Shown piece after piece: positions 2,005-18,851 of a DNA stretch of 64,000 bases. The translations under genes were made by a program, and so were the position numbers. This DNA comes from Octopus bimaculoides (lineage: Eukaryota), in the NCBI RefSeq assembly GCF_001194135.2, contig NC_068992.1, positions 49,935,555 through 49,999,554 of the forward strand, read 5' to 3'. How positions within the stretch are numbered: the stretch's first letter is position 1; each line of letters starts with the position of its first letter. The notes under the pieces were generated by a model, which had not been told where the DNA came from, did no database searches, and was given only the letters and a program-made list of their open reading frames with translations.

Positions 2005-2089
2005 TTATATAGCTTTCCTGTGATATTCAGGTGATGCCACGATGTAATCAGAGAGACTGAATAATGATGAGGTGTTCTTTTGGAGAAAT
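2005..2089 (-). CDS. MORF4L1: MRG15 last coding exon ([27 protein letters not shown])
   Basis: PEYHRKA C-terminus; TTTCAG acceptor, TAA at 2007-2005. Confidence 0.95.
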
Positions 2090-5000
2090 CTGAAAGAAAC
2101 GGACAAAATAGAACTCCATGAAGACAGACTTAAAGACAGAGGCAGTGGAATGAAGGGGAAAATAGGTAGACATAGGGAAATGGTCAGATAAAGTCAAAGA
2201 AATACATACCAAAATGGACAGACAGTAGGTATCGAAATATCGACAAACTGATAATTAGACAGACAAAGACCCAGGTAGAAAGACTGATTTGGGTAATTAG
2301 ACAGATGAAAGATCAGAGAGAGAGAGAGAAAGAGAAAGAGAGAGGTGGTGTTCAGGATAAGGGGTGGATAGACTGACAGATGGAAACAGTAAGAGATAGC
2401 TGGAGTGAAGCACTAACAGACAGGCAGGTAAGGAGACAGATAGACATACAAATAAACAGATAGGTGAAAGGGAAGACAGACAGACAGGTGCTTAAGAAAA
2501 CAGATATACTGGCATAAAAGAAGGTTAAAGGGCAGATAGATAAATAGGTGGGTAAGATGATGGGCAGGTAGACACATAAGTGAAAGGAGAGAGAGATAAG
2601 TGAGAGGGAAAGGTGACAGATAGACAGGTAGGTGAGAGGGAAGAGAGACAGATACACAGGTAGGTGAGAGTAGATAGAGAGGTCAGTGAGAGAACAGACA
2701 TACATACATACAAGGTGAGAGAGCATATAAATAGATGCACAGGTGGGAAAGAAGACAGATAGATCAATAGCCAGGTAGGTGAGAAGTTAAAGAATTAGAT
2801 ACACCGACAGGTAAGGTGAGAAGACAGATTGGAAGGTAAGCAAAAAGATAAATTTAAAATATCATAATATGGACAAATAATGGAACTAAAGACAATTTTA
2901 ACCCCCCCCCCACAAAAAAAAAAAATAACATCACCACCGCCACCATTATTATTACTATCAAGTGCAGTGTTCGGTACATGATGTAATGCCAGTTTGACCT
3001 TTACAGAAAATCAAAGCAGATAAAATAGAAGTAGACATCAGAAGAACTCTGACCCTTTCCCCTCTCCTCACCTCTCTCTCTTTGTGTCCCAAGCTGCCAC
3101 ATATCACTGTGAGAGTGTATGAAACTTCCTTCTTGCCACCTCCTCTGTCCACCACCACAACTACCTGACAATGGAAATCCAATGAAATCTGTTCAAAGAT
3201 TCCTCCATCACCATCCCACCTCGACCCCATGGTATCAGTATTAGCTCATACTTAGCATTGCAGAGGTTACATGGATATGAAGAAGATAGAGGGAGTCCAG
3301 AGAGATTAGGGTGGGGTCATTCGAATATATCCTCCACCTCTTAGCACTGGGTCGCTCATTGTTCATTAGCCGTAGGCGTAGGTGTGATTGTTGCCGTTGT
3401 TGTTTAGCCCCAGGCCAGGTCTGATCAAGCCGACCTATGATCAAAAGTGATGCAGTGAATGGGTGAAGAGAGCAAGAATATGATAGAATAGTGACAGCAC
3501 TTGGTAACAAGCCGGGGCAGTTACAGCTCTTCCTGACCGTGTATGAGTGTTTATGAGACAGCGAATATGAGTGTGTGAGAGTATGAGTGTGAGTGAGTGA
3601 GTGAGTGAGTAAGAGTGCGCTGCTGTGCTGTGTTTGCAAATATGTATATATGGGGGTTTCTAAGTGAATGTGTGTGTGTGTGAGAGAGTGGGTGAGAGTG
3701 CTTGAGTGTATTTGCAAATGTGTATACATGTGAAATTCTAAGTGAGTGTGGGAGATATACAGTTTCTGAGTGTGTGTGTGTGCATGCATTTATGTGTCTT
3801 TCTGAATGTGTGAGAAAGTGTGTGTAGATGCATATGTGCATGTGTATGTGTGTACGCATGGATCAGCATGTTGCTGTTAGGATTGAGGAGTAACTGATAT
3901 TTAATACTAAGCTTGCTTCCCAATCTTATGATCTTGGGGTTCAGTCCATCTGTGTGGCACTTAAGGTAAGTGACTTCTGCAACAGATAGCCCTGTAGGAA
4001 CCAAAGCCTTATGAGTGGATCTGGTAGACAGAAACTGAAAAAAGCCCATTGTGCATATGTGTGCATGTGTGTGTTTGTGTTGTTTGTCTCCCACCACTGT
4101 TTGGCAACTAGTGCCGATTGGTTTATGTCTCTAACTTGGTGGTTTAATTTAATGAAAATACCAGACTTAGAAAAACAAGTGCTCAGGTCAATTTGTTCAA
4201 CTAAACACTTCAAGGTGGTGCCCCAGCATGGTCGTGGTCCAATGACTGAAACAAGTAGTAAAAGATAAAAAGCAAACACAAGAGGGATACTCACTGTAGG
4301 AAGTCATGAATGTGCAGCATTAATAACTGGATACTCTTCTCATCCAGAGACGTGTAGGTCAACATTCCTCCGATTTTCACTGAAAAACACAACACACCCT
4401 TACATCAAGATCACATATAAGATTATAGGGGGTCCACACAACAAAAGTGTAAATTGGGGAGCTACAATAATATTTTAAGGGCCCCTGAAAAAATTTGCTT
4501 TGATGTGTGTATTGGTATGTATTGCAAAAAACAGGGTTCTTTTCTATGGCTAGATGCCTTCTTTCTGTAACATATTACATAGTTCAACCTACAATAGTTA
4601 ATGTGTAAAAAACAAAATAGGAATCTTGAAAGAAGTTTCAATAAAACTAATTTTTAAATATTGAATGGCTGGTGGAGGGCAGAATAAAATAGTAATCCAT
4701 AGATAAAAAATGAATGAGAACCCTTGAGATTTATCATCATTTAGCATCTGTTTTCCATGCTGGCATGGATTAAATGGTTCAACTATAACTGGTCTAGAGA
4801 GCTGCACCAGGCTCCAGTCTGTTTTGGCTTAGTTTCTATGGCTGGATACTTTCCTAACACCAACCATTCCACGAGGTGTATTGGGTGTCTTTTATGTGTC
4901 ACCAGCGCGGGTACCAATAAGGTGTCACTGGCACAGATGCCTTTAATGTGTCACCAGCGTGGGTGCCTTTAACATGTCCAGTGACTGATGAGTATGTCTG

Positions 5001-8000
5001 GTCAAGGTTTACATTTTAAGAAGCTAATTAAAATGCCATCACATGTATGGATAATGTTGGTCTAACACTAGTTATTGAGACCTATGCCTGTGAGGGAACT
5101 ACTATGTGGTTGTTTGACTTGTTAAACACAACAGCCAAATTTCCTTCAAATCCAACTTTTACATTTTAACCCTTTTGATAGGGAATCATCTGAGACTGCC
5201 ATTTGTTCTTTGAGGAAATAAAACTTTCCTGTTTTAAAGTGAATTAAATTAAAATCTTCCATCAAAATATGTGAATTTATGTTCCAAACATCAGCTTCAT
5301 AGTGACAAAGTTATTTTACAAAATCTTCCATTATTTCCAAAATTATTTGAAACAAGGGCAGCATATTTCAACAGAAAAAAGCAAACAAAAGTTACCATCC
5401 CTTTTGATCCGAACCCACTTGAGACTGTCCCTGATTCTTTGATATAAACTCCTTTTCTTAAAGTGATCTTAATTAAAACATTCCAACACAGTTTCATGTT
5501 GGGCTGGCAGAATCATTAGCAAAGCGGGTGAAATACTTAGCAGCATTTCATCCATCTTCACATTCTGAGTTCAAATTCCGAGGTTGACTTAGCATTTCAT
5601 CCTTTCGGGGTCGATAAAATAAGTACCAGTTGAGTATTGAGGTCAATGTAATCGACGTGCTCTCTCTCCCCCAAAATTGCTGGCTTTGTGCCAAAATTTG
5701 AAATCAATTAATGTTCTAAACACCAGATTAATAACGACAAAGTTATTTTGCTATATTCTTCATCATTTTCAAAATGAACAGAAACAAACACTGTGTGTTT
5801 CTATGTTGTCATGAGCTTCATGGTTCTGTTGCAGTACTGCAACATGCATGAAGAAAAACAGTCTTTGTGAAGAACATATATAGAATGGTCGCCTATAAAT
5901 CAACAACTTCATGAAACATAGTGAGGAATGGGGTCTTACCAAATAGTCGCAGCAAATGAATCACTCCATAAATGGCTGACATGGGGGTGTCAGGATAGTC
6001 AGCTAGAATCTGAACAACAAAAACAAATTTAAAAATATGTGATGGACAATGATTTACCAAGAAGAAAATGAAGGAAGAGATTATTGATGCAGTGAGAAGT
6101 ACAATTAACTATAAGGATATATTTAGGGCGAGGGACTTGGTTGAAGCATACATTAGGATTAATTAGGAATAAACAACAGGACAAGGATCAGTGACAACAC
6201 TGTGTAACATGATTTGGGTAGCAACTGTTATCTCTGATTTGCTTACCCCTAAAGAGTATGAAAAATGGCTAATGTTTCCTTCAAACTTTGATTTTTGTTA
6301 CATTTATGCAAACCTCAAAGAATCCCTCTCAACACATGGCTATGATGCTCCCCCATTATTCCTGCTTGTGATCAGAAATGCACATATTGTCTGCCACTAA
6401 TGGACATGCTCAAGTGGTTAAGGTCACGCAACTGACAGGCAAATCTGTAGTATTGTGCAGAATATTTGCTATAACGATATTTCTGCATCAGCAACTTGGT
6501 ACTGAAATGTAATGGAAAATAGGCCAGTTTCAAAACGTTGATATCCCAGTCACAAAAGCAAAATTTGAAGAGAATATTGTTTCCTTGATTTCTAGACAGA
6601 GGCAAATAGGAAATAAGACTTACTGATCGAAGACAACAAAAAAAATTGTTACATATTTAAATGCTGTAATTTATACAAGTAATGCAGTTATACAAAACAG
6701 GGCTTCTAAAATAAAATTATACGAGGGGGCACAGAAGTTCCTGGCTTTAAGGCCTGGTTGGAGTCCCAGCCTTCAGAGTTGTTTTTATAGGGCTTAGAAA
6801 AACTGAAGGACCACTGCAATAAGTATGTGAATCTGAGAAGGGAATATGTTGAATAATATCATAATAAACTAATCCGCCTGTATTTTTTTTTTATCCAAAG
6901 CCAGGAACTTTTCAGCAACCCCTCATACAGGAATGGCTATGTGGTTAAGTTTGCCTCCACATAATTTTGGGTTCAGTCCCACTGCATGGTACCTCGGGTG
7001 GTTGGGAAGCAAGCTTCTTACCACACAGCCACTTTCATGATAAATTTTTAATTATTATGAAATTACCTCTTTGTTGAGTGTACAGACAATTATTTCTACT
7101 GTTTTTCTTTTTGTTTTTGTTTTTCTTTCTCTAATCAAGAAGAAACTTTCACTCAATCACTTTTCATAGAAAGCATTCATAGCATTCAGTGAATTATTCT
7201 TTAGCTCATTTATCAAAATTTATGCTATTGGCTCATTTAAGTTACTTCCCTTAGCTCATGACTGCACCTGGTTTTCTGATCTAAAATTCAGTGATTTAAA
7301 GTGAAAATTATCAAAATATGTTAATTGATATTTCAAATATCAGATTAAAAATGACAAGATAATTTTACTAAATTCTCCCTTATTTCCAAAATTAATTGAA
7401 GTGAAGGCAGTGTATTTCAACAGAGGAATGGTAACAAAAGAGTTAATGGTGACAAATGTTGGAAATACCACTTACCTCAGCATATTGTGGTCTCTCAAAT
7501 TTGTATAGTAATTGTGTCCCTAACATAACGTTAAAATATTCCCGGATTCCATGGGTCACTTGCAACAAAGTCTCCCTAAAATTCAGATATGCATTCAGGT
7601 GTGAAAAAGGGAAGAAATTTAAGATAATAAAAAAAAAACATTGGATTTTTAAAGAAGATAATTTTTAAGTCAGGCACAAGGACAAAATTTTTTTAGAAAA
7701 TTATGGGAGGAGAATAATTGCTCTTTGTTGCTCTTGCCAAATGCACCCAGTATAACACAATACGAGAGACAAATTAAGAAGAAATTAATTAAATACATTA
7801 TTGTTATATTTGGAGGAGAAGGGTCATTTTTTTCCCTTGCCAAATAAACACATGCACTATATATTTGTTCTTCACTCGTTTATTACTATTCTCTGAAGAA
7901 AGGAGGAAACACATAGGATGAAAAGTTACTGAAGAGGTCACAAGTGTGTGGCAAAAGATTTCCAACCATTGAACATAAAATAAGAACAGCAATAAACAAG

Positions 8001-10006
8001 CGAAGAACGAATATATAGTGCATGTGTTTATTTGGCAAGAAAAAAATGACCATCCCCAAATACAACAATATCTGTTTCAACACACAATTACACATCAGGA
8101 ATCTTGCAAAACAAATACATGGACGTAAAAAATTAAATATATTACTGTTTAATTAATGTAGAAAAGTTGAGCTTACTTGGGCATGGTCCCTGTTTTTAGC
8201 TTGTAGGCCAGATATTGCTCTAAGATTGAGTCAATTGTGGTTCGAGCAGGTAACGAGACAAGCTAGGGAGAAAAAACGAAAAAAAAGAGAAAAACAAAAT
8301 ACATACAAATCTCATGAGAAAAACCTATCATCAAAGGGGTTCCAACCACGACATGACCATCCTGTCTTTCTAGGTGGTTCCTGAGTGAATTGGAACAATG
8401 TGAAATAAAGTGTCTTGCTCAAGAACACAACACACAGACAGGTTCGGGAATGAAACTCACTACATCATGATTGTGAACCTAACATTTTAATCACTGAGCC
8501 ATGAGACATGCATTATTTTACATTGCACTTGTTAGTAGTGATAGCAAGATTTTAAGAGATTCCCTGCCTATTTAGCTTAAAGTTAACCTCAGCTTTAACT
8601 ACAAAAACACCTGCGTGATGCCACTTTAAAGTGCCTGTGTGGCGTCACATAAAAGTGACCATGTGGTGTCATGAAAAAGTGCCAGTGCGATGCCATGCAA
8701 AAGCACCTATGCAGGGCCATGTAAAAGCACCCATGCGATGCCACATAAAAGCATCCAGCACTCTGTAAAAGAAGGGTATCAAGCAGTAGAAACCATGCCA
8801 AATCAGACTACAGTCTGATGCAGCTCCCCAGTTCTGGTCAAACACCATCCAACACATGCCAGCATGGAAAACAGACTAAACTCTTCAAGGCGAGGTTCCA
8901 GCATGGTCGCAGTCCAATGACTGATAACAAGTAAAAGAATAAAATAAAAGAATCTGAGACAAAATCCTGGGTATTGTCAGTTTTCAGTCCAAGAGATGTT
9001 TTATGATGGAAATGACATTGTCTTCTCTACCTGCTTCTGTCTGGTTATTAAGTCCCAGTCATCAACAAGCCAGGGTTTCAAATCTTCGGGTAGCTTTACT
9101 TTTACTTCCATCTTTGATGGGAAATGATCCTCCTGAAGGAATATAAACATAGATATTTTTTTAAAAAAAGGGTAAAGAAAAAAAAAAAGCAGCAAACAGT
9201 TTTATATAAAGAGAGAGAGAGAGTGAATAGCTGAATCAGCAAACTGCCAGACAAAATGGTTAAAGACTAGCAAAAATGGTCAAACGCAGAATAAAAGACC
9301 TTATGGTGTGGCTGTGTGGTAAGAAGCTTGCTTCCCAATCACATGTGAGTGAATTTGATAAACAGAGACTGAAATAAGTCTGTCAAATAAATATGTGTAT
9401 GTGTGTTGATCTGTACTCTTGTCTCGATAACATGTGGACTGAGTTTATTAAACACAGAACCTAAGGTCACAGAAGAAATACTGCTAAGCAGTTTTTCTGG
9501 CACATTAAGGATTCCACCAGCTCACAGTCTTATTAAAAGGAATAATAATGACAGTGATGATGATGATAAATAATTAAGTCAAACATTACAATATATATAT
9601 ATACCAGTAATTAACCAGAGGGATGAAACATGTTTAGTTAAAAGAACAAAAGTCAAAGAAACCCATATAGAAAAGATTGTGTATCAAAAATTTAGGAAGT
9701 TAGAAATAACATTTATCCTGTTATTGGATCCATAGAAGTTACCTTTTCTGTAATACTGATTTCTCGGATCTGTGTGTGGATTTGGCATGGTTTGCTGTCT
9801 TTCTCCACATTTGTACTGTTGCTTATTTCTGAATGGTCCGATTCATTAGGGGAGTCCACCTCTTTTCTACCTTTACCCCGACCACGCTTCTGCAGGCTCC
9901 AATCACTGGTGTTCACTTTGTTGTCTTCAGATGCAGACTTTCGTACTTTATCAGATGCTTTCCAAGCAGCTCTTCGGGTTGTTGATTCTTCTTTTTCCTA
10001 TTAATT

Positions 10007-10040
<34 letters not shown>

Positions 10041-13000
10041 TTTCCCTAAAAGAAATGGAGAAACTTTTAAAATACAAAGACCTGGAAATAGAGGTAAGTC
10101 GAATGTGGAATCTAAAAACAGAAACAATTCCTATCATAGTAGGTGCCTTAGGTATAATAAAAAAATATTCAGACAAATACATAACAAAAACACCAAGACT
10201 TATAAATATATATAGCATACAGAAAATTGCACTACTGGGTACTGCACACATCCTATGCAAAACACTTTCAATACAGTAACCATAAGAGCATCACAGCAAA
10301 CCACAGCACATACCTAAGGCACACAGAGCTGTGCTCGGTAGTGAAGTGAAAGCACGTTATAAAACTAAAACTACTGAATAATAATCCTTTCTACTATAGG
10401 CACAATGCCTGAAATTTTGGGGGAGAGGAATTAGATTACATTGACATCAGTGGTGCTTATTTCATCAACCCCCGAAAGGATGAAAGGCAAAGCTGACCTT
10501 GGCAGAATTTGAACTCAGAACACAAAGAATATATGCTGCTAAGCATTTTGCCTGGCATGTTAACGATTCTGCCAGCTTGCGACCTTAATAATAATTCTTT
10601 CTAATTTTGGCACATGACCAGCAATTTTGAGGAGAGGAGGCAAGTCAATTACATTTACCCCAGTATTTAACTAGTACTTCATTTCACTGACCCTGGAAGA
10701 ATGAAAGGCAAAGCAAAGTCAACCTAAGTGGAATATGAACCCAGAATGCGAAGAGCCTGAAGAAATGCTGCTAACAATTTTGTCTGACATGGTAATGATT
10801 CTGCCAGCTTGTTGCCTTGGACAGTAATAACTTGCTCAACTCACACCAGCAAGGAAAGCAAATGTAAAATGATCATGAATTCCAAATTAAGTTGGTAAAT
10901 GAGAAACAATTCTCAGAACTACCATTCCAAAACTCATTACAGCTTAGTTCAATCTAAATGTATTAGTTTTGTTGGTTGTTTCAAAGAAATTTATTTTCAT
11001 CTGTTTCATATTCTCATTGAACCATGGAATTCTCACAGAATAACCATTAACCAATCTCTTTCCATTCATGAGTTTTCTTATTTAACCAGAATGACTGAAA
11101 ACTATACAGGCATACATCAACTCATGTCGTTTCAAGTTGCATCTTTTTCAAATTAATGTTTTTTTTTTTAAAGAAATTAATAGAAAAAAAAAAACCTTCA
11201 ATTTCAGTTTACATCAGTTTAGGGGAACATATTTAAAAGCATAGAAATTTCAGAAAACACTTAAAAATCAAATAAAATACATCTGAAAATATGAACGAAC
11301 CATTTATTAAAAGTGATATAAAGTAATAAATCTTTAAAAATGTTTTTTTGTGTTATGATGATTTTTGAGTGAAGTTGCATGTCTTGGAACCATTTACCAA
11401 TGGAAGCTGAGATATGCCTTTATGTGGCACTGTCAGTTAAGAGGGTTCCAGTTGATCTGACCAATGGAACAGCTTGCTTGTGAAATTAATATGCAAGTGG
11501 CTGAACACTCTCCAGACACATGTACCCTTAATGTACTCCACAAGGAAATTCAGTGTCCACAGAATGTAACAAGGCTGGCTCTTAGAATTACACAGGTAAA
11601 ACTCATTCTTACCAGCTGAGTGGACTGGAGCAATGCAAAATAAAGCGTCTTGCTCGAGGGCACAATATGCAGCCGGGATGCGTACTTTCACACATAGCTT
11701 ATATGTACCTGTGTAAGGAACATGAAATAAAAACGCTTCTGTTTAATAAAAGTAAGAACTCAAAGAACATGTTAACTTACCGATTCCACATTGGAGTCTA
11801 GTTTTGCCTTCTTTCGCTTTAAGTCTGCACTTGTTGTCTGTGTTGAGGCTGCACTTGAAGACGCACTACTGTTGCTGTCGGTGGCTGATGATTGGGCTAA
11901 AATGGGAAATCCATCCAACACAGCTTCATTATCAAATATTTCATACAGCCACAGGGATAGTGCAGAAAATTAGCAATCAACTGAACTTGGTTACAATATA
12001 TTTACCAGTAATTAACCACGAATGAAATGTGCTTAGTTAAAACTGGTTCTCAACAATTTTTCACCTATGGGCCTCTTTGATTATTATTTTACGCTAGTAG
12101 CTCCCCATAGCCATTTGATGTTTTAGAAACTAGTTTTATAGATATTTCTTACAAAGTTTCTATTTTGTTTTTCACATGTTTATTTGCATATGTTAGCAAG
12201 AAACATGTTAAACTATGTTAAGTGTTAGATAAAGAAACCTGGCTGTTACTTGCAATAAATATATCTAAAGCAAAGTTTTTTCATGGACCCTTAGAATAAT
12301 ACTGTGGATCCCCAAATTACTATTTTGCAAAATCTTATACAAACCTTGGTTGAGAACCACTGAGTTAAAAGAACAGGAAGCTAGAAATAACATTTTCTAT
12401 TGAAATTGGGATCGCATTGTACCTGCACATTACCAAACTACAATCAACACAACATATTTTAATATCTGCACTGTACCTTCACACATATACTAACTCATAG
12501 ACTGCACCACCACCACACAACAGACTCAGCTACACTGCACCCCCACACAATGTAATGGGGTGTATTACATGGTACCCAGATTAGACTGAATTAAGATAGA
12601 GCAGGACACTGGAGACGTAGATTGTTTCTGGATGTTTGATTGGCAATCTTTATGCTGTAACAAGTCAACTAGGGATTGGCTGGGAATAAAGAACAACAAC
12701 AACAACTATAACCGTGCAATAACAAGAACAACAACATGCGTACACCTACGTGCTTTAGGCTTTGATGACTTCTCTCCTGGCAGTGATGATTTATCTTTTT
12801 CTACTTTCTTGACAGCTTTAGTTTTCCGAGAGCCTCTACAATGGAACATCGATAGTCATGGTTACAAGATTTAATGAAGGACAATGTATGTGGTTGGGGT
12901 ACATAAATACGTAAGAGTGCAGATGCCTTGTTGATAATTTGTGTGCTTGTATGAGAATGGATGCGAGAATGTGTTAACAGATGTGTATGAGAGGATACAT

Positions 13001-15733
13001 TTACTTGTGATCATCATCATCATCATTTAGCATCTGCATTCCATACTGGCATGGGTTAGACAGTTTGACTGAAACTGCTAAGCTGGAGAGCTGCACCAGG
13101 TTCCAATCTGATTCGGCATGGTCTCTACAGCTGGATACCCTTCCTAACACCAGCCAAGAGTGTGATGGGTGCTCTTTACGTGCCACTGGCATGGGTGCCA
13201 GTTACATGACACCAGATGGTTAGAGATGGGGATAGAGGTAAATGTGGTGAACGGGACAGTGGTGGTAGTATGGTCCATGGTAAATATCAGTATAAAGAAG
13301 GGAACTGAAAGGTATAGAAGAGGGTGATAAGTAGCAGGGCAATAAGCCTGTGTATAAATATGAAAATAGTGTGATATGTGCACAGGGCAGGGGGGGATGG
13401 GGTCAGTGAGAGAGAGATGTACAGTGACAGAGATGGATGTCAGAGATATATAGGGGTAGCTATAGTGACTAAAGACCAGAGTAACTGTCTATGGTAAATA
13501 CACGATGGTGTTGAGAATGATAACAGATAGAGTGAAAAGATGATAAAGTAAATTCTGCAACGTGTGACATAGTTCAAGTTAAAAGAATTGTTGAAAAGAG
13601 ATAAGAAAAAAACAATACTGAAGTTAAAATATATCTCACGCGTGAGCTTTCTGTAGTTCTTTTTGCTTCTGTAAACCAGCGTCGTTAAACTTCAAAACTC
13701 TACACTCAGGCACCCATTCATCCCAGCTAGAAGATATAAAAATAAACAAGCATAAAGCAAAATATAAAAGATTCATTAATTCTGCAATGACTTTCCATTG
13801 TGGATATTTTTTATGAAATGATGTCAGAAAGAATACAAAATGTAGACATAAAGAGGATATAAAGAATATATAAAGCCACCACTGTTGATTTAAAGTCCAG
13901 TTTCCCATGCTTATACGAGGCAGAGTCATTTCCATAATGCATTTTCATTAACTGCATCAATTGGCTACTCCTCACCAAAACATACGCACATGTATATACA
14001 TATATATATATATGCACACACACACACACACATATATATGTATATATAAGAATATATATAAAGGAGGCCACTAGCTGGACTGCTAATGTGCTAGAAGAAG
14101 ATCACATGTCATGTGTCTACTAAGACCGAATAATTCTCAAAGGGAATTCCCTTTGAGAATTATTTGGTCTTAGTAGACACATGACATGTGATCTTCTTCT
14201 AGCACATTAGCAGTCCACCTAGTGGCCTCCTTTATATATATTTTTATATATACATATACAATAATCCTTTGTGATCTCAGATATTTTTTCTGAATCTCCC
14301 TGATTCTTTTAATGTGCTTGTTCCCTGGTATTAAATTGATATTAATTAATATCCAATTTTTTTACCCTATTGTTTAATCTTTATATTCCTCCGTTTTCCC
14401 ATTCTTTGAACTTTCCGTCTTTCCGACGAAGGGCTCCGCCCGAAACGTCATACTCTCTCTCTTTCCTTTCCCGAGCGTCCAATAACACTATCCGTATCAC
14501 GTCCTCACTTTGTTGTTTTTTTGTTATTGTTTTTTGTGTTTTTTTTTTTAACTATATATATATATATATATATGCGCAGGATGAGAGAGGCAGCTGAAAG
14601 CGCCTTTTGTTGGCTTTGGAGCAAGAGAGAAGAGTTAAGCTGGAAGCAAGGAGGAGGTGAGGAGTAGTGATTTGGCCACCTCTACTGACCCACCAACGAG
14701 ACAGTGTTACGGTTCAGGATCGAAACACTCAATGAATGTTAAGATATTGTCTGATGACATCAGTTCCTCCTGGCCAAAGCTCCATTCACTTTGGTAAGAG
14801 GAAAAAAAAGCACCTCCTTCAAAGTGTTGTTTAACATCATCATTTAACGTCCATTGTCCATGCTGGTATGGGTTGGACTAACATATATATTGTCAATTCA
14901 AATAAAAAAAACAAACAAACATGAGGATGTGCACAACCAATGTATTAGCTTGACATTTGGTGAAAGAAGAGTGTTTGACATTTCAAGCATAGCTCTTCGT
15001 CGGAAAGGAGAAAGGGAAAAGTCCAAGGATAAAAAAGAAACAGCCAATGGTAAACATCTAGTTACATTGCTGACACAAATGCATGTATATTGCATTATTT
15101 TTATGCTAGCATAGATGGCAATTTTTGACAGGATCCAATGGATCAGAGGTGCAGGATTTGTTCCAGTGTCACAGTTTTGGCATGATTTCTATGGGTGGAT
15201 GCCCTTCCTAATGCCAACCCTTTTACAGAGTACATTGGGTGCATTTTTCATGGCACCAGCACTAGTGAGGTTTTCTTGCATATGACAGGCTTCCACACAC
15301 CTAAATTTTATTCACAAAGAAGGTACTAAGGCTATTATAACAGATGAGACTGTGTACAAAGTGCCACACAGAGGGACCTAACTCAGAGCCATACCCTCGC
15401 AAAGGAAACCTCTCATATATGGCCATGCTACCTGCACTGGAAAATAAAAGAAAGACACTAAAAGCTTGTCCTCAATGAAAACAGGATTGTAAAAGAAATA
15501 AAGGGGAAAAAAATGGAATTGTTTGAATAAAAGAAGAACTCACTTCTTATTCCATCCATTGTAATGAATGAAATATCGGATAATTTTCTCTTTAACATCG
15601 TATTTGACACACTGAAAGACAGAGAGAGTGTAATTTAATTGCAGTCAATTAGATGAAAGATTTTGGTACAAACCACATACAGATAGGCAAAGGGAAACAG
15701 ATATAATTAGAGGTAGACAGATCAATAAATATA

Positions 15734-15802
<69 letters not shown>

Positions 15803-16271
15803 TGAGAAAATAGATAATTAGAGAGAGATCAATAGATCTGCAGAGAAAGAGAGAGACAGACCATTAGAGATGTCAATAGATAGATATGTTGAGAAACAGA
15901 TAGACAGATCAATAGATATACCAACAGACAGATAAATAGATAGACCCCCATACATATATGGAAGGATAATAAACAGATAGGCGGATGAATAGATAGTCAC
16001 ATTGAAAGTTAAATAGGCAGACGGACAGATAGATATATATAGAGAGGGGGAGAGAGAAAGGTAGACAGGCAAGCAGATTGAAAAATAGAGACATCTTTTA
16101 CTTGTTTGAGTCGGGAAGAACTTTTAGTCAGATCATTTGGTCCCTGTACTTATTTTTTAAAGCCTGATGCTTATTCTATCAGTCTCTTTTGCCGAACCAC
16201 TAAGTTACTGGGGCATAAACACATCAACACTGGTTGTCAAGCAGTGCTGGGAGACAAACAAAGATACAAAA

Positions 16272-16303
<32 letters not shown>

Positions 16304-17744
16304 TAATATCATCATCATCCTCATTTAACATCTGTTTTCCATGCTGGCATGGGTTGGAGAGTTTGTCAGGGGCTGGCTAGGCAGAAGACTGCACTAGGCT
16401 TCACTATGGATGCCCTTCCTAACACCAACCTCCTCAAGGAGTGGACTTATATATAAAATAGGCTTCTTTCAGTTTCCATCTACCAAATCCATTCACAAGG
16501 ATTTGCTTAGTGGCATTTCTTCAAACTTTATATTCCGAATTCAAATGCCGCCACGGTCGACTTTGCCTTTCATCCTGGTGATGTTGTAAAACAAGTACCA
16601 GTTGAACACTGGGGTCGATGTAATCAACTTAGCTCTACCCCAAAATTTCTGGCCTTGTATCAAAATTTCAAGATAATTTATGTTCCAAACATCAGCTTAA
16701 TAAGGAGAAAGTTATTTTATTAAATACTTGTTTTCATAAGTAATTCAAACAAGGGCAGTGTATTTCATTAGGAATATTACAACAAAAGGGTTAAGGCTGA
16801 TTACTTAACATACTAACATCCAGACCCCAAAAACTTTCTATGTCAACCCAATGAGTGGACTAAGCACAATCTCAGTTGACTTGCTACACAATAACAAGCA
16901 AGTTTTCATCAAATGAAATCCTACCAGCTTCTAAATAAATGAATAAACAAAAGAAAGGAGCATACAACAGAGTGTAATCTGAGATACTGCACAAGGTCAG
17001 AGTAATAGTCGTAATGATAGTCCTCCTTCAATTGTGCTGGTCAGAGAGTGAACAGCAAAAATAGATCTTAAAGATAACACAGAAGAGAAACAAAACCAAG
17101 AATTATATGAGGGGGGTGCTGAAAAGTTTCTGACTTTCAGGGTATTGCGAAAGGCCTGGTTGGAGGCCCGATCTTCTGAGTTCTTTTACACAGCTTAGCA
17201 AAAATGATAGACCACTGCAATAAGTGTGTGAAAGTGAGAGGGGAATGTGCTGAATAAAATCATAATTAACTGATCCTCCTGTATTTTCTTTTACCTAAAG
17301 CCAGGAACTTTTCAGTATCCTTTTGTATGCATACCATATTTCCCAGAATACAAGTTGAATTCTTCAGACCAAAATATACAGCCAAAAAAAATATAGGTTG
17401 ACTTATACACCACGACAACTTTAGGGGATCGAATATTCCATGTGAAATGCAGCACGATTTGGAAAGACAGTGATGCTGTTTGAATGTTCACAGTATATAC
17501 TGTGCTAACTTGTATGCCAGAAATTACGGTATACTAAAACATGAAAAGGAAACATCAAGCTAGACAAGAAGAAAATTATATGACGCAGCAAAAGAATAAA
17601 TTAGACATTAAGTGAAGATTAATTATATTATAGAGCAAGAGAAAATTTGATGAACTTACTTTGGCTTCATATAATAATGGTCCATGAAAACACAGAACAC
17701 GCTCTCCTGAAAAGGGAAATAGTTTTGAGACTGAGCATGAAAGT

Positions 17745-17785
<41 letters not shown>

Positions 17786-18851
17786 CCTTTCTACTAAAGA
17801 CACAAGGCCTGAAATTTTGTGTGGAGGCTATTAGTTGATTACATCAACCTCAGTGTTTCACAGGTACTTCATTTATTGACCCCAGTATGGAACTGGTGAT
17901 GCTCAAACCAGTGAACTGGCTTGAATGAAATAACGACTGGTTATTGATGTTTTCGATATCGCCGTCCGTTTCCATAAAGAGCTCACAACTTTAGGAATTA
18001 TGTGCAAACAACACTGGTTCCTATCCACGGCAAGTTTATTTGTTGCGCGAAACGTAATATTGCATCTGGCTAGATTCTTAAATTCCCAAATGCATGCCTT
18101 TTTTAAAGCTCCTCCGACGCAATGTTTATTTCGGAAGGATGAAAAGGCGGAATACATATTCGGAATGCCTGTCACTCCATCGATGGAAACTAAAATGAAA
18201 CTAAAATAAGCTACAATCACCATTTATGTATTTTCAAGCCATCCTCAACAGTATGACATGCCGCATATTGAAGATAGACGAACCAGACTTAAAGAGCCAA
18301 CAACGTTGTTTAACCTGCTAGAAAAATGGAATAGCAGCCGAATCTCATTCAAACTGCACCCTACTGTCTTAAAGAAAAGAAGGATGATTTGAAAAGAAAC
18401 TACTGGATAATGACGGTTGAGAAAATTTTGACCATAGAACTGGCCTGGAACTAAACAACAACCGCTTTTTGAATAGTCAGTCTGTCAGGCTTGTTTCGAT
18501 GGAAGCGGCGAAGAGGGCGGAGGAAGACATCAAGCTTCAAATGTTGACAACAATGGAAGTCCAGGCGGTTGCAATGGACAAAGAAAAAAAAAGTTTTGTT
18601 CTAATTATTCGTTCGTTTAAGCACCTTGTTGTCAATGATAATAACTATTACGTTGGGAGCAACATATACGGATTGTGTAAACTAAAAATATACACATGTG
18701 TTGCGAGAAAACCGAGAGTGAAAAAAAAAACAACAAGAATTAATATTATGAGAATAACCGACCACGCTGTTTCGCTCTTTCAACTTAAAGCTCGATAATT
18801 GTACAAATTACAAGTATACTCACCCTCAACAAATTTCATCTTAGGAGCCAT
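2005..18851 (-). CDS. MORF4L1: MRG15 / mortality factor 4-like 1 (chromodomain + MRG domain), complete spliced CDS, 319 aa (404 aa with the 9743-9997 exon)
   Basis: Exons 18824-18851, 17660-17706, 15544-15611, 13640-13726, 12750-12835, 11781-11896, 9031-9132, 8177-8262, 7476-7575, 5940-6009, 4295-4379, 2005-2089 sum to 960 nt with GT-AG junctions in phase. Translation [25 protein letters not shown]...[12 protein letters not shown]...[22 protein letters not shown]...[22 protein letters not shown]...PEYHRKAI* matches recalled MRG15 motifs throughout. Confidence 0.96.
2200..2830. repeat. Degenerate (GATA/GACA)-type purine-rich repeat; similar tract at 15660-16080
   Basis: Recurrent AGACAGATAG/AGGTAG units. 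Confidence 0.8.
4295..4379 (-). CDS. MORF4L1: MRG15 exon 11 ([27 protein letters not shown])
   Basis: LDEKS...HDFL motif; CAG acceptor, GTGAGT donor. Confidence 0.95.
5940..6009 (-). CDS. MORF4L1: MRG15 exon 10 ([23 protein letters not shown])
   Basis: YG..HLLRLF motif; CAG acceptor, GTAAGA donor. Confidence 0.95.
6719..6928. mobile_element. Mariner-like non-autonomous element (~210 bp); further copies at about 17105-17330, 33990-34200, 52500-52708
   Basis: Imperfect TIRs GAGGGG..GAAAAGTTCCTGGCTT / AAGCCAGGAACTTTTCAGCA.CCCCTC, TA at the flanks. Confidence 0.75.
7476..7575 (-). CDS. MORF4L1: MRG15 exon 9 ([33 protein letters not shown])
   Basis: Highly conserved MRG motif; TAG acceptor, GTAAGT donor. 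Confidence 0.96.
7799..8070. mobile_element. Foldback MITE, ~90-bp imperfect TIRs
   Basis: 7801-7892 is the reverse complement of 7983-8068 (30-bp perfect core); TA on both sides. Confidence 0.75.
8177..8262 (-). CDS. MORF4L1: MRG15 exon 8 ([28 protein letters not shown])
   Basis: LPA...DSILE.Y motif; TAG acceptor, GTAAGC donor. Confidence 0.93.
9031..9132 (-). CDS. MORF4L1: MRG15 exon 7 ([34 protein letters not shown])
   Basis: Start of MRG domain; CAG acceptor, GTAGAG donor. Confidence 0.96.
9743..9997 (-). CDS. MORF4L1: Candidate extra/cassette MRG15 exon, 85 aa, phase 0-0
   Basis: TAATAG acceptor, stop-free 255-nt frame [13 protein letters not shown]...[10 protein letters not shown]...SITEK, AAG|GTAACT donor; in frame with both neighbouring exons. 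Confidence 0.6.
10039..10380 (+). mobile_element. 5'-truncated Dong/R4-type non-LTR retrotransposon in a (TAA)n tract
   Basis: [28 protein letters not shown]...[13 protein letters not shown] is the R4/Dong restriction-like endonuclease C-terminus; (TAA)n on both sides. Confidence 0.85.
11781..11896 (-). CDS. MORF4L1: MRG15 exon 6 ([38 protein letters not shown])
   Basis: [13 protein letters not shown] parallels human KKRARVDPTVEN; TTTTAG acceptor, GTAAGT donor. Confidence 0.9.
12043..12362. mobile_element. hAT (Charlie-like) MITE; partial relatives at about 4570-4725 and 37610-37765
   Basis: Ends CTGGTTCTCAAC / GTTGAGAACCACTG; 8-bp TSD AGTTAAAA at 12035-12042 and 12363-12370. Confidence 0.88.
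12750..12835 (-). CDS. MORF4L1: MRG15 exon 5 ([28 protein letters not shown]), linker
   Basis: Phase 2-1 as required between exons 4 and 6; TAG acceptor, GTAGGT donor. Confidence 0.85.
13640..13726 (-). CDS. MORF4L1: MRG15 exon 4 ([28 protein letters not shown])
   Basis: WDEWVP motif; TAG acceptor, GTGAGA donor. Confidence 0.95.
14035..14258. repeat. 224-bp spacer-less palindrome
   Basis: 112-bp arms centred on GGGAA|TTCCC (14146/14147), 3 mismatches. Confidence 0.95.
14419..14453 (+). ncRNA. Penelope-type minimal hammerhead-like motif (degenerate), copy 1
   Basis: CTTT-CCGACGA-A-GGGC tcc GCCC-GAAAC-GTC. Confidence 0.5.
14581..14800 (+). mobile_element. 3' fragment of an RLE-type (HERO/NeSL-like) non-LTR retrotransposon
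   Basis: Reads [20 protein letters not shown], resembling the AAExASxWLWxKR C-terminus of these elements, then a UTR-like tail. Confidence 0.5.
14973..15007 (-). ncRNA. Penelope-type minimal hammerhead-like motif (degenerate), copy 2
   Basis: CTTT-CCGACGA-A-GAGC tat GCTT-GAAAT-GTC-AAAC. Confidence 0.5.
15544..15611 (-). CDS. MORF4L1: MRG15 exon 3 ([22 protein letters not shown])
   Basis: Chromodomain YFIHYxGWNK; CAG acceptor, GTGAGT donor. Confidence 0.95.
15739..15800. repeat. (TA)n microsatellite (many other TA, CA, GA, TAA, CAT tracts across the window)
   Basis: Visible. Confidence 0.95.
17660..17706 (-). CDS. MORF4L1: MRG15 exon 2 ([16 protein letters not shown])
   Basis: Chromodomain motif; TTTTCAG acceptor, GTAAGT donor. 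Confidence 0.95.
18824..18851 (-). CDS. MORF4L1: MRG15 exon 1 ([10 protein letters not shown])
   Basis: ATG at 18851, donor G|GTGAGT, phase 1. Confidence 0.9.

What the first reader, a model, noticed from the sequence alone, without database searches (positions are those of the whole stretch)
9743..9997. Extra 85-aa in-frame exon between the MRG15 linker and MRG domain
Seen: a stop-free 255-nt, phase 0-0 block bounded by TAATAG| and AAG|GTAACT, lying between exon 6 (ends ...NVES) and exon 7 (EDHF...), encoding a charged, disordered-looking peptide with a basic [10 protein letters not shown] patch. Established: in human MRG15 the equivalent residues (VEN/EETF) are contiguous. Its acceptor is an (ATT)n microsatellite beside a Dong insertion rather than a pyrimidine tract, i.e. 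weak. Reading through the donor gives VTSMDPITG* (stop 9713-9715) with a minus-strand AATAAA at 9444-9449. Inference: a lineage-specific alternative exon giving either a 404-aa MRG15 with an added NLS/AT-hook-like nucleic-acid-binding patch, or a chromodomain-only truncated isoform lacking the MRG scaffold domain.
Basis: partly seen in the sequence, partly recalled or inferred. Interest (0 to 1): 0.7.

Follow-up and report, generated by a model that had tools for sequence, protein, structure and literature searches.

The report
Constitutive cephalopod-specific MRG15 linker exon
This is a real 255-base coding exon of the octopus MRG15 (MORF4L1) chromatin-reader gene that lengthens the floppy linker between its two domains; it was spliced in by every read in the three RNA runs read, it is already in the public gene model, and it is an ordinary lineage-specific addition, not an alternative exon.

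Summary
The block at 9743-9997 (minus strand) is as described: 85 stop-free codons, phase 0-0, bounded by TAATAG| and AAG|GTAACT. It is coding exon 7 of 13 of Octopus bimaculoides MORF4L1/MRG15. The spliced 404-aa product is identical to RefSeq XP_014776683.1. In three raw RNA-seq runs, 75 reads join exon 6 (11781) to 9997. All 30 reads at the next exon's start (9132) come from 9743, so none skip the exon. Depth is zero past the donor, so neither the proposed cassette behaviour nor the truncated chromodomain-only isoform is seen. The exon is conserved with the same splice phase in O. sinensis, O. vulgaris and Argonauta hians, and in transcripts of a more distant cephalopod. Its dN/dS is about 0.09. 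It is absent from a second cephalopod MRG15 paralog and from all non-cephalopod MRG15s examined, where VES|EE.F are contiguous. It is therefore a lineage-specific exon gain in a conserved phase-0 intron. The peptide is predicted to be disordered and matches no Pfam family. Its basic patch fits a simple NLS pattern but lacks the AT-hook GRP core. Verdict: real, constitutive in the runs read, already annotated, of low interest.

The parts
9743..9997 (-). The exon in question: coding exon 7 of 13 of MORF4L1/MRG15, 255 nt, phase 0-0, residues 145-229 of the 404-aa protein.
   Evidence: Stop-free translation. Spliced CDS is identical to XP_014776683.1. RNA depth is about 20-30x against 0x in the intron.
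9998..9999 (-). AG acceptor of the exon, in use.
   Evidence: 24, 25 and 26 reads in X41, X42 and X44 continue from here into the end of exon 6, with agreement 1.
10009..10040 (.). (TAA)n / (ATT)n microsatellite that takes the place of a polypyrimidine tract.
   Evidence: TRF reports period 3, 10.7 copies. ATT, ATC or ATA arrays lie at the same place in O. sinensis, O. vulgaris and Argonauta.
9741..9742 (-). GT donor of the exon (AAG|gtaact), in use.
   Evidence: Joint 9742/3 to 9131/2 seen in 13 and 11 reads. 30 of 30 reads at 9132 come from the exon.
9863..9892 (-). Basic patch [10 protein letters not shown] (protein residues 180-189).
   Evidence: Sequence. Conserved in O. sinensis and Argonauta. 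The more distant cephalopod is basic here but has a different sequence.
11781..11896 (-). Upstream coding exon 6, ending [13 protein letters not shown]. This is the canonical NLS-like KRKR..VES motif that directly precedes the MRG domain in other animals.
9031..9132 (-).
   Evidence: Pfam MRG matches residues 227-393.
2005..18851 (-). Whole MORF4L1 coding region, 13 coding exons: 18851-18824, 17706-17660, 15611-15544, 13726-13640, 12835-12750, 11896-11781, 9997-9743, 9132-9031, 8262-8177, 7575-7476, 6009-5940, 4379-4295, 2089-2005.
9713..9715 (-). Stop codon that read-through of the donor would reach. No RNA evidence that this happens.
   Evidence: ORF listing. Zero depth at 9600-9739 in three runs.
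9444..9449 (-). AATAAA hexamer in the intron. No evidence that it is used.
   Evidence: Sequence. No reads at 9426-9580 once repeat-derived reads are excluded.
10055..10279 (+). 74-aa ORF fragment, antisense to the gene, that looks like the tail of a retroelement. It is followed by two SINE-like copies up to about 10820. It is not part of the exon.
   Evidence: ORF, sequence, no Pfam family, very high repeat-derived RNA depth.

Best explanation
**What it is.** The block is a coding exon of Octopus bimaculoides MORF4L1 (MRG15), included in every read in the RNA data available. MRG15 is the H3K36me3-reading subunit shared by NuA4/TIP60-type acetyltransferase and Sin3/Rpd3S-type deacetylase complexes.

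**Where it came from.** The exon was gained in a conserved phase-0 intron. That intron lies between the NLS-like KRKR..VES motif and the first residues of the MRG domain. The gain happened in one of two cephalopod MRG15 paralogs.

**How it most likely works.** It adds 85 residues to the disordered linker that tethers the chromo-barrel domain, which sits on the nucleosome, to the MRG domain, which sits in the enzyme complex.

**Shown here.** Both splice junctions are used. No skipping and no read-through were seen. The product is identical to the RefSeq model. The exon is conserved under purifying selection in octopods. It is absent elsewhere. It is predicted to be disordered.

**Inferred only.** The longer, highly charged tether changes the reach and flexibility between the two domains. 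The conserved basic cluster (KRGRGKGRK, which fits the K-K/R-x-K/R pattern) may act as a second nuclear-localisation signal or a non-specific nucleic-acid contact. The flanking acidic Ser-rich stretches (SASED, SPNESD.SE) may be phosphorylation sites. The purine-rich GAAGAA start of the exon plausibly acts as a splicing enhancer that offsets the T-only acceptor tract.

The confidence given applies to the shown core (a real, constitutive, annotated, lineage-specific coding exon). The functional inferences alone would rate about 0.35.
For: - **Identity to the annotated protein.** The 13-exon CDS translates to 404 aa identical to P0121 = XP_014776683.1, MORF4L1 of O. bimaculoides.
- **Junctions.** 24, 25 and 26 reads at 9998 continue into the end of exon 6 with agreement 1. 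Joint 9743 to 9132 was seen in 13 and 11 reads. At 9132, 13, 10 and 7 reads all continue into the 3' end of the extra exon, with agreement 0.99-1. That is 0 skipped of 30, a 95% upper bound of about 10%.
- **No read-through.** Depth is zero at 9600-9739.
- **Other runs.** Eighteen further RNA-type runs from seven studies hold all sampled 31-mers of the exon.
- **Orthologues.** O. sinensis and O. vulgaris have a 255-nt exon with 3 aa changes. Argonauta has a 258-nt exon. All have AG|G...AAG|gtaa. A 408-aa transcript-derived protein from another cephalopod contains it.
- **Selection (Nei-Gojobori).** Octopus against Argonauta: exon pN 0.155 and pS 0.70, dN/dS about 0.09. This is like linker exons 5-6 (pN 0.187). 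The MRG domain has pN 0.02.
- **Paralog B.** It has the intron at VES|EE but no exon and no similar sequence within that intron.
- **Disorder and novelty of the peptide.** AF2 gives pLDDT about 25 and no secondary structure for residues 78-241. There is no Pfam family and no hit among 1.84 billion representative proteins.
- **Two-module architecture.** In the yeast relative Eaf3, the chromodomain lies on the nucleosome and the MRG domain is bound to Rco1 (PMC10709384).
Against: - All three raw-read runs come from one study and their tissues are unknown, so tissue-specific skipping is not excluded.
- Reads overlapping 9038-9080 are silently filtered by the tool. This lowers counts at the downstream junction.
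- The functional part (tether, NLS or nucleic-acid patch, phosphorylation sites, splicing enhancer) rests on sequence pattern only.
- The basic patch is not conserved residue by residue in the more distant cephalopod, and the C-terminal half of the exon diverges strongly there (pN 0.42). This also fits a loosely constrained spacer.
- The AF2 alignment had only 10 sequences.
Confidence: 0.85

Rival explanations
1. One reading: a cassette (alternative) exon, included in some transcripts and skipped in others, so that the gene makes both a 404-aa and a 319-aa MRG15.
For: - The acceptor has no C-containing pyrimidine tract and follows a microsatellite.
- The exon is phase 0-0, so skipping would keep the reading frame.
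- Other animals have annotated isoforms with small insertions at exactly this junction: Patella vulgata X2 and Haemaphysalis longicornis X1.
Against: - 0 of 30 reads skip the exon in three runs.
- Depth at the exon's 5' end equals the depth at the end of exon 6.
- RefSeq gives one unlabelled isoform in both O. bimaculoides and O. sinensis.
- No skipped form of about 320 aa with high identity appears among 2743 homologues, which include transcript assemblies.
Confidence: 0.1
2. Read-through of the donor followed by intronic polyadenylation near 9444 gives a chromodomain-only protein ending ...[13 protein letters not shown].
For: An in-frame stop lies 9 codons past the donor, and an AATAAA lies about 290 nt further on.
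Against: - Depth is zero at 9600-9739 in three runs, while the exon itself has 20-30x.
- The few reads at 9430-9500 seen disappear when the repeat-containing stretch is left out.
Confidence: 0.03
3. The exon is real and constitutive but functionally neutral. It would be a lineage-specific expansion of a disordered spacer that is tolerated rather than used, with constraint only on keeping the frame, the charge and the lack of structure.
For: - MRG15 linker length varies widely among animals, with total lengths from about 290 to 528 aa in the hits.
- The exon evolves about as fast as the other linker exons and much faster than the two domains.
- It is predicted to be disordered and matches no family.
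Against: - dN/dS is about 0.09 over a synonymously saturated distance, so the amino-acid sequence itself is constrained.
- The motifs WKASDK.R.SASED and [25 protein letters not shown] are nearly identical between Octopus and Argonauta.
Confidence: 0.35
4. The exon was derived from a transposable element or from the adjacent microsatellite or retroelement (exonization of repeat sequence).
For: The upstream intron next to the acceptor is filled with a retroelement-like ORF fragment and SINE-like copies, each flanked by AAT repeats.
Against: - The exon is single-copy by RNA depth.
- It has no similarity elsewhere in the window.
- It has no protein relatives.
- It predates the Octopus-Argonauta split, whereas the flanking repeats differ between the species.
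Confidence: 0.05

Closest known systems
Human/vertebrate MORF4L1 (MRG15), 323-aa form
   Same: Same architecture of N-terminal chromo-barrel (Tudor-knot) domain, disordered linker with a KRKR..VE(S/N) motif, and C-terminal MRG domain. The MRG region is 62-69% identical.
   Different: In vertebrates VEN/VES and EETF are contiguous. The octopus gene has 85 extra residues exactly there.
Cephalopod MRG15 paralog B (Argonauta GAB1606130.1, O. sinensis 'isoform X2' 333 aa, Acanthosepion pharaonis MORF4L1)
   Same: Same exon-intron plan, with a phase-0 intron at VES|EE. Same domains.
   Different: It has 12 coding exons and no exon in that intron. Its MRG domain and C-terminus are more diverged (...YLRKVG instead of ...YHRKAI).
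Bivalve MRG15 with long linkers (Crassostrea, Ostrea, Saccostrea, Mercenaria; 413-451 aa)
   Same: The linker is expanded to a similar total length and contains basic motifs.
   Different: The bivalve expansion lies upstream of the KRKR..DPTVES motif and carries true AT-hook-type KKRGRP cores. The octopus insertion lies downstream of that motif and has no GRP core. The two look like independent events.
Isoform-specific insertions at the same junction in Patella vulgata X2 (VRPRK) and Haemaphysalis longicornis X1 (16 aa)
   Same: Extra residues are inserted exactly between VES and EE.F.
   Different: Those insertions are short and are annotated as alternative isoforms. The octopus exon is long and constitutive in the data.
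Yeast Eaf3 in Rpd3S
   Same: A two-module reader. The chromodomain lies on the H3K36me3 nucleosome and its DNA, and the MRG domain is bound to Rco1 in the complex, so the linker acts as a tether (PMC10709384).
   Different: There is no sequence relation between the Eaf3 linker and this exon. The functional analogy is an inference.

Membership tests
MRG15 / MORF4L1 (MRG family chromatin reader) | N-terminal chromo-barrel / Tudor-knot domain | tested here: met
   Pfam PF11717 (E 5.6e-15) and PF22732 (E 6.3e-17) match residues 7-73.
MRG15 / MORF4L1 (MRG family chromatin reader) | C-terminal MRG domain | tested here: met
   Pfam PF05712, E 8.5e-54, matches residues 227-393.
MRG15 / MORF4L1 (MRG family chromatin reader) | Identity with the annotated orthologue | tested here: met
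   The spliced product is identical to XP_014776683.1.
Cassette (alternatively spliced) exon | Both inclusion and skipping junctions are present in RNA | tested here: not met
   Inclusion junctions were seen in 75 and 30 reads, and the skipping junction in 0 of 30 reads, in three runs. Only one study was sampled.
Intronic-polyadenylation truncated isoform | RNA coverage continues past the donor to a poly(A) site | tested here: not met
   Depth is zero at 9600-9739 in three runs.
AT-hook DNA-binding motif | Core R-G-R-P (GRP) flanked by basic residues (definition from general knowledge) | tested here: not met
   The patch is KRGRGKGRK, with no proline core. The distant cephalopod has QRRVRSKNKK. 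Bivalve linkers do carry KKRGRP.
Classical monopartite NLS | K-K/R-x-K/R pattern in an exposed region (definition from general knowledge) | tested here: inconclusive
   K-R-G-R and the surrounding basic residues fit the pattern, and the region is predicted to be disordered. Nuclear import was not tested, and the canonical KRKKAK motif of exon 6 is also retained.
Transposon-derived (exonized) exon | Detectable similarity of the exon to a repeat family or a multi-copy sequence | tested here: not met
   The exon is single-copy by read depth. It has no other match in the window and no protein relatives. No cephalopod repeat library was available.
Dong (R4-clade, TAA-repeat-specific non-LTR retrotransposon), for the neighbouring insertion | Reverse-transcriptase/endonuclease ORF and insertion within (TAA)n | tested here: inconclusive
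   The fragment at 10046 to about 10376 is flanked by AAT repeats, but its 74-aa ORF matches no Pfam family.

The most novel reading that the evidence does not exclude
After a duplication of MRG15 in cephalopods, one copy gained a new, selectively maintained 85-aa disordered module. Its conserved basic cluster and acidic, phosphorylatable flanks would give this H3K36me3 reader a distinct mode of chromatin or nucleic-acid engagement, or of nuclear import. The two paralogs would then have divided or extended the ancestral role. A weaker variant is that the exon is skipped in tissues or stages not sampled here.
Probability: 0.25. Interest if true: 0.35.

Novelty: already known. Interest (0 to 1): 0.15.

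Why it matters
It matters little beyond annotation. The exon is already part of the RefSeq and GenBank protein models for three Octopus species and for Argonauta, and linker length in MRG15 varies widely among animals.

The modest point of interest is evolutionary. This is a clean case of exon gain in a deeply conserved phase-0 intron, in one of two cephalopod paralogs of a core chromatin reader, and the new exon is kept under purifying selection. That could serve as a small case study of how disordered linkers of chromatin readers grow.

The two full-text searches that paired a gene name (MRG15, MORF4L1) with cephalopod or octopus found no paper on a cephalopod MRG15.

Tried and rejected
- **Word-indexed protein search with the peptide.** The exon peptide plus short flanks gave no hit, although 99%- and 82%-identical proteins are in that collection. 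I treated this as a sensitivity failure of the search, not as absence.
- **HMMER against representatives.** The 85-aa peptide found nothing among 1.84 billion representative proteins. This says little about cephalopods, because clusters are represented at 50% identity.
- **Laying reads on one stretch spanning exon 6, the extra exon and the next exon.** The skipping junction was therefore tested from loose ends at each exon boundary instead.
- **Loose ends at 11780.** They were never printed, despite 31-40 reads there. The test was done from the other side.
- **Logan RNA contigs.** They showed zero depth over the exon although the index says they hold it. The likely reason is that transcript contigs carrying the human-like MRG region are filtered out. 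They were not used as evidence of absence.
- **Identifying the species behind P0003.** That it is a decapodiform is inferred only from its divergence.
- **Homology of the exon with the bivalve linker.** The first alignment suggested it. I rejected it because octopus exon 6 ends with the canonical KRKK.K.D..VES motif at the canonical spacing, and the distant cephalopod keeps ...DPAAVES before the insert.
- **Verifying 'Dong'.** No Pfam match.
- **A paper on MRG15 and nucleosomes.** It held nothing about the linker.

Full report
**1. The observation**

On the minus strand, 9997-9743 is an 85-codon stop-free block: [85 protein letters not shown]. It is preceded by ...aataattaatag and followed by gtaact.

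- A (TAA)10.7 array at 10009-10040 lies directly upstream of the acceptor.
- Reading through the donor gives VTSMDPITG and a stop at 9713-9715.
- AATAAA lies at 9449-9444.

**2. The gene**

A tBLASTn search with a vertebrate MRG15 sequence found one set of exons on the minus strand. Joining 13 coding exons at canonical GT..AG sites gives a 1215-nt CDS. The exons are 18851-18824, 17706-17660, 15611-15544, 13726-13640, 12835-12750, 11896-11781, 9997-9743, 9132-9031, 8262-8177, 7575-7476, 6009-5940, 4379-4295 and 2089-2005.

- The 404-aa product is identical to P0121 = XP_014776683.1, 'mortality factor 4-like protein 1 [Octopus bimaculoides]'.
- Pfam finds the Tudor-knot / MSL3 chromo-like domain at residues 7-73 and the MRG domain at 227-393. 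It finds nothing for the exon peptide.
- The exon is therefore already part of the public gene model, and the window is O. bimaculoides.

**3. RNA evidence**

Only three raw-read RNA-seq runs were available (X41, X42, X44). They come from one study, and about 6% of each was read.

- **Upstream junction.** At 9998, 24, 25 and 26 reads continue with GATTCCACATTGGAGTCTAGTTTTGCCTTC, with agreement 1. This is the reverse complement of the end of exon 6 (...GAAGGCAAAACTAGACTCCAATGTGGAATC). The last G of exon 6 equals the G of the acceptor AG, so the junction is 11781 to 9997.
- **Downstream junction.** The joint 9742/3 to 9131/2 (GT..AG on the minus strand) was seen in 13 and 11 reads.
- **Skipping test.** When only the first 48 nt of the next exon were laid, every read there (13, 10 and 7) continued into TTTCTGTAATACTGATTTCTCGGATCTGTG, the 3' end of the extra exon, with agreement 0.99-1. 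That is 0 skipping reads of 30, a 95% upper bound of about 10%.
- **Depth.** Exon 6 ends at depth 40, 31 and 37, and its intron is at 0. The extra exon starts at about 30.
- **Read-through.** Depth is zero at 9600-9739 in all three runs. There is therefore no read-through of the donor and no use of the intronic AATAAA. The few reads at 9430-9500 were repeat-derived and vanished.
- **Editing.** No T>C change (A-to-I on this strand) reaching 3% was seen in the exon.
- **Other runs.** Eighteen further RNA-type runs from seven studies hold all sampled 31-mers of the exon.
- **Annotation.** RefSeq gives a single, unlabelled isoform in O. bimaculoides and O. sinensis. No high-identity product of about 320 aa appears among 2743 homologues, which include transcript assemblies.

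**4. Relatives**

The exon has the same length and splice sites in O. sinensis (L006 18746-19000) and O. vulgaris (L007 19646-19900), with 3 amino-acid changes. Argonauta hians has a 258-nt version (L005 11074-11331). All are bounded by AG|G...AAG|gtaa.

- A trinucleotide array (ATT, ATC/ATA) precedes the acceptor in all four genomes.
- A 408-aa protein from transcript assemblies of another cephalopod (P0003; L001-L004) has ...KRKKARLDPAAVES, then a divergent but alignable insert, then EDRF....
- Its distance from Octopus (about 68-70% identity) parallels the octopod-cuttlefish distance in the other paralog (72%). It is therefore probably a decapodiform. This is an inference, because the species could not be looked up.

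Nei-Gojobori counts for O. bimaculoides against Argonauta:

| Region | pN | pS | dN/dS |
|---|---|---|---|
| Extra exon | 0.155 | 0.70 | about 0.09 |
| Linker exons 5-6 | 0.187 | 0.743 (saturated) | could not be computed |
| MRG domain | 0.020 | 0.615 | 0.015 |

The exon is protein-coding sequence under purifying selection, at the level of the rest of the linker.

**5. Lineage specificity and origin**

In every non-cephalopod MRG15 aligned (gastropods, a chiton, bivalves, nemerteans, a vertebrate), the KRKR.R.DPTVES motif runs straight into EE.F of the MRG domain.

Cephalopods have a second paralog: Argonauta P0094 (331 aa), O. sinensis P0125 (333 aa), Acanthosepion pharaonis P0126/P0127 and Logan P0128.

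- Mapped on its Argonauta locus, this paralog has 12 coding exons and a phase-0 intron of about 1 kb exactly between ...DPTVES and EEAF...
- That intron holds nothing similar to the extra exon.

Octopus exon 6 ends [13 protein letters not shown], the canonical motif at the canonical spacing. The exon therefore sits in the ancestral intron. The simplest history is a gain in paralog A after the duplication. A loss in paralog B is less parsimonious, given the outgroups.

The expanded bivalve linkers lie upstream of the motif and carry KKRGRP cores, so they are independent expansions.

The exon has no other copy or relative in the window and no hit among 1.84 billion representative proteins. No donor gene or transposon can be named.

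**6. What the peptide looks like**

- It has 18 K/R, 16 D/E and 27 S/T/N/Q residues out of 85. GRAVY is -1.56 and pI is 8.8.
- AF2 gives pLDDT about 25 and no secondary structure for residues 78-241, although the alignment was shallow.
- Blocks conserved between Octopus and Argonauta are [26 protein letters not shown](K/R)[15 protein letters not shown] and IRE.
- The basic cluster fits the simple K-K/R-x-K/R NLS pattern but has no AT-hook GRP core. In the distant cephalopod it is QRRVRSKNKK, so what is conserved is basic charge, not an RG motif.

**7. Mechanism proposed**

In the yeast relative Eaf3, the chromodomain sits on the H3K36me3 nucleosome and touches DNA, while the MRG domain is held by Rco1 inside Rpd3S (PMC10709384). 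The linker is a tether between the two.

The octopus exon more than doubles that tether, from 67 to 152 residues. It also adds a basic cluster flanked by acidic Ser-rich stretches. The most likely effects are:

- longer reach and greater flexibility between the two domains;
- an extra NLS or a non-specific nucleic-acid contact;
- regulation by phosphorylation.

These are inferences. A neutral spacer expansion remains a serious rival.

On splicing, the acceptor tract is 55% pyrimidine, all of it T. That equals exons 10 and 12 of the same gene, so it is not an outlier. The exon is the longest in the gene, is 65% purine, and begins GAAAAAGAAGAA. A similar start is kept in the other species. This is a plausible enhancer, but it was not tested.

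**8. Verdict**

Of the interpretation, the lineage-specific, in-frame 404-aa product stands. The alternative-exon reading, the truncated isoform and the AT-hook reading are not supported. The feature is already annotated, ordinary in kind, and of low interest.

Noticed in passing
L008 (Argonauta BAAFZT010000048.1, 32.38 Mb) versus L005 (same contig, 12.00 Mb); proteins P0094, P0125, P0126, P0128: Cephalopods carry a second MRG15 paralog with the canonical VES|EE junction, 12 coding exons and a diverged C-terminus (...YLRKVG). In Argonauta it lies on the same 37.8-Mb contig as paralog A, about 20 Mb away. In O. sinensis it lies on a contig of the same length as paralog A's chromosome. Source annotations label it 'isoform X2', although it is a separate gene.
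   Followed up: partly
Proteins P0016 (Patella vulgata X2) and P0098 (Haemaphysalis longicornis X1): Other animals have annotated isoforms with short insertions at exactly the same VES|EE.F junction: VRPRK in Patella and SEEASAPLPHKTRHAK in Haemaphysalis. This intron seems to be a recurrent site for extra coding sequence.
   Followed up: no
Proteins P0005, P0007-P0009 (oysters): Oyster MRG15 linkers contain two KKRGRP (AT-hook-type) motifs and a duplicated KRKR.R.D motif upstream of the canonical one. This is an expansion independent of the octopus exon.
   Followed up: no
Protein P0127 (Acanthosepion pharaonis, 392 aa): This paralog-B model has an insertion of about 55 aa inside the chromodomain, between GWNK and WDEW. 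From memory, that is the place where the long human MRG15 isoform carries its extra segment. It could be an analogous alternative exon or a retained intron in the model.
   Followed up: no
window 10046-10820: The intron upstream of the exon holds a 74-aa plus-strand ORF fragment (10055-10279) that resembles the tail of a retroelement. Two SINE-like copies follow (about 10387-10590 and 10597-10820), each preceded by AAT repeats. RNA depth here is hundreds to thousands, from repeat copies elsewhere. The 'Dong' label could not be verified.
   Followed up: partly
window 9302-9345: A short SINE-like segment in the downstream intron attracts 300-450x RNA reads, which continue into ...GTTCCGGGTTCAGTCCCACTGCGTGGCACC. 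This is repeat-derived and unrelated to the gene's splicing.
   Followed up: no
window 10046-10062 (minus strand): A good-looking acceptor, tttctccatttcttttag|G, lies 49 nt upstream of the AG that is used, just beyond the microsatellite. Using it would bring an in-frame TAG (10000-9998) into the mRNA. All 75 junction reads use the downstream AG instead.
   Followed up: partly
window 9927-9928: In run X44 only, 4 of 27 reads carry TC>AT on the plus strand. This would change codon 24 of the exon from GAA (Glu) to ATA (Ile). The reads have only two start points and one orientation. It may be a polymorphism or an artefact.
   Followed up: no
Protein P0124 (Logan, 350 aa): One transcript-derived member of the distant cephalopod's cluster starts at MKFNEHG and so lacks most of the chromodomain, while keeping the extra exon. 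It may be a partial contig or a form with an alternative 5' end.
   Followed up: no
The word-indexed protein search returned nothing for the 110-aa peptide query, although near-identical proteins are in the collection. Negative results from that tool for short, low-complexity queries should not be trusted.
   Followed up: yes
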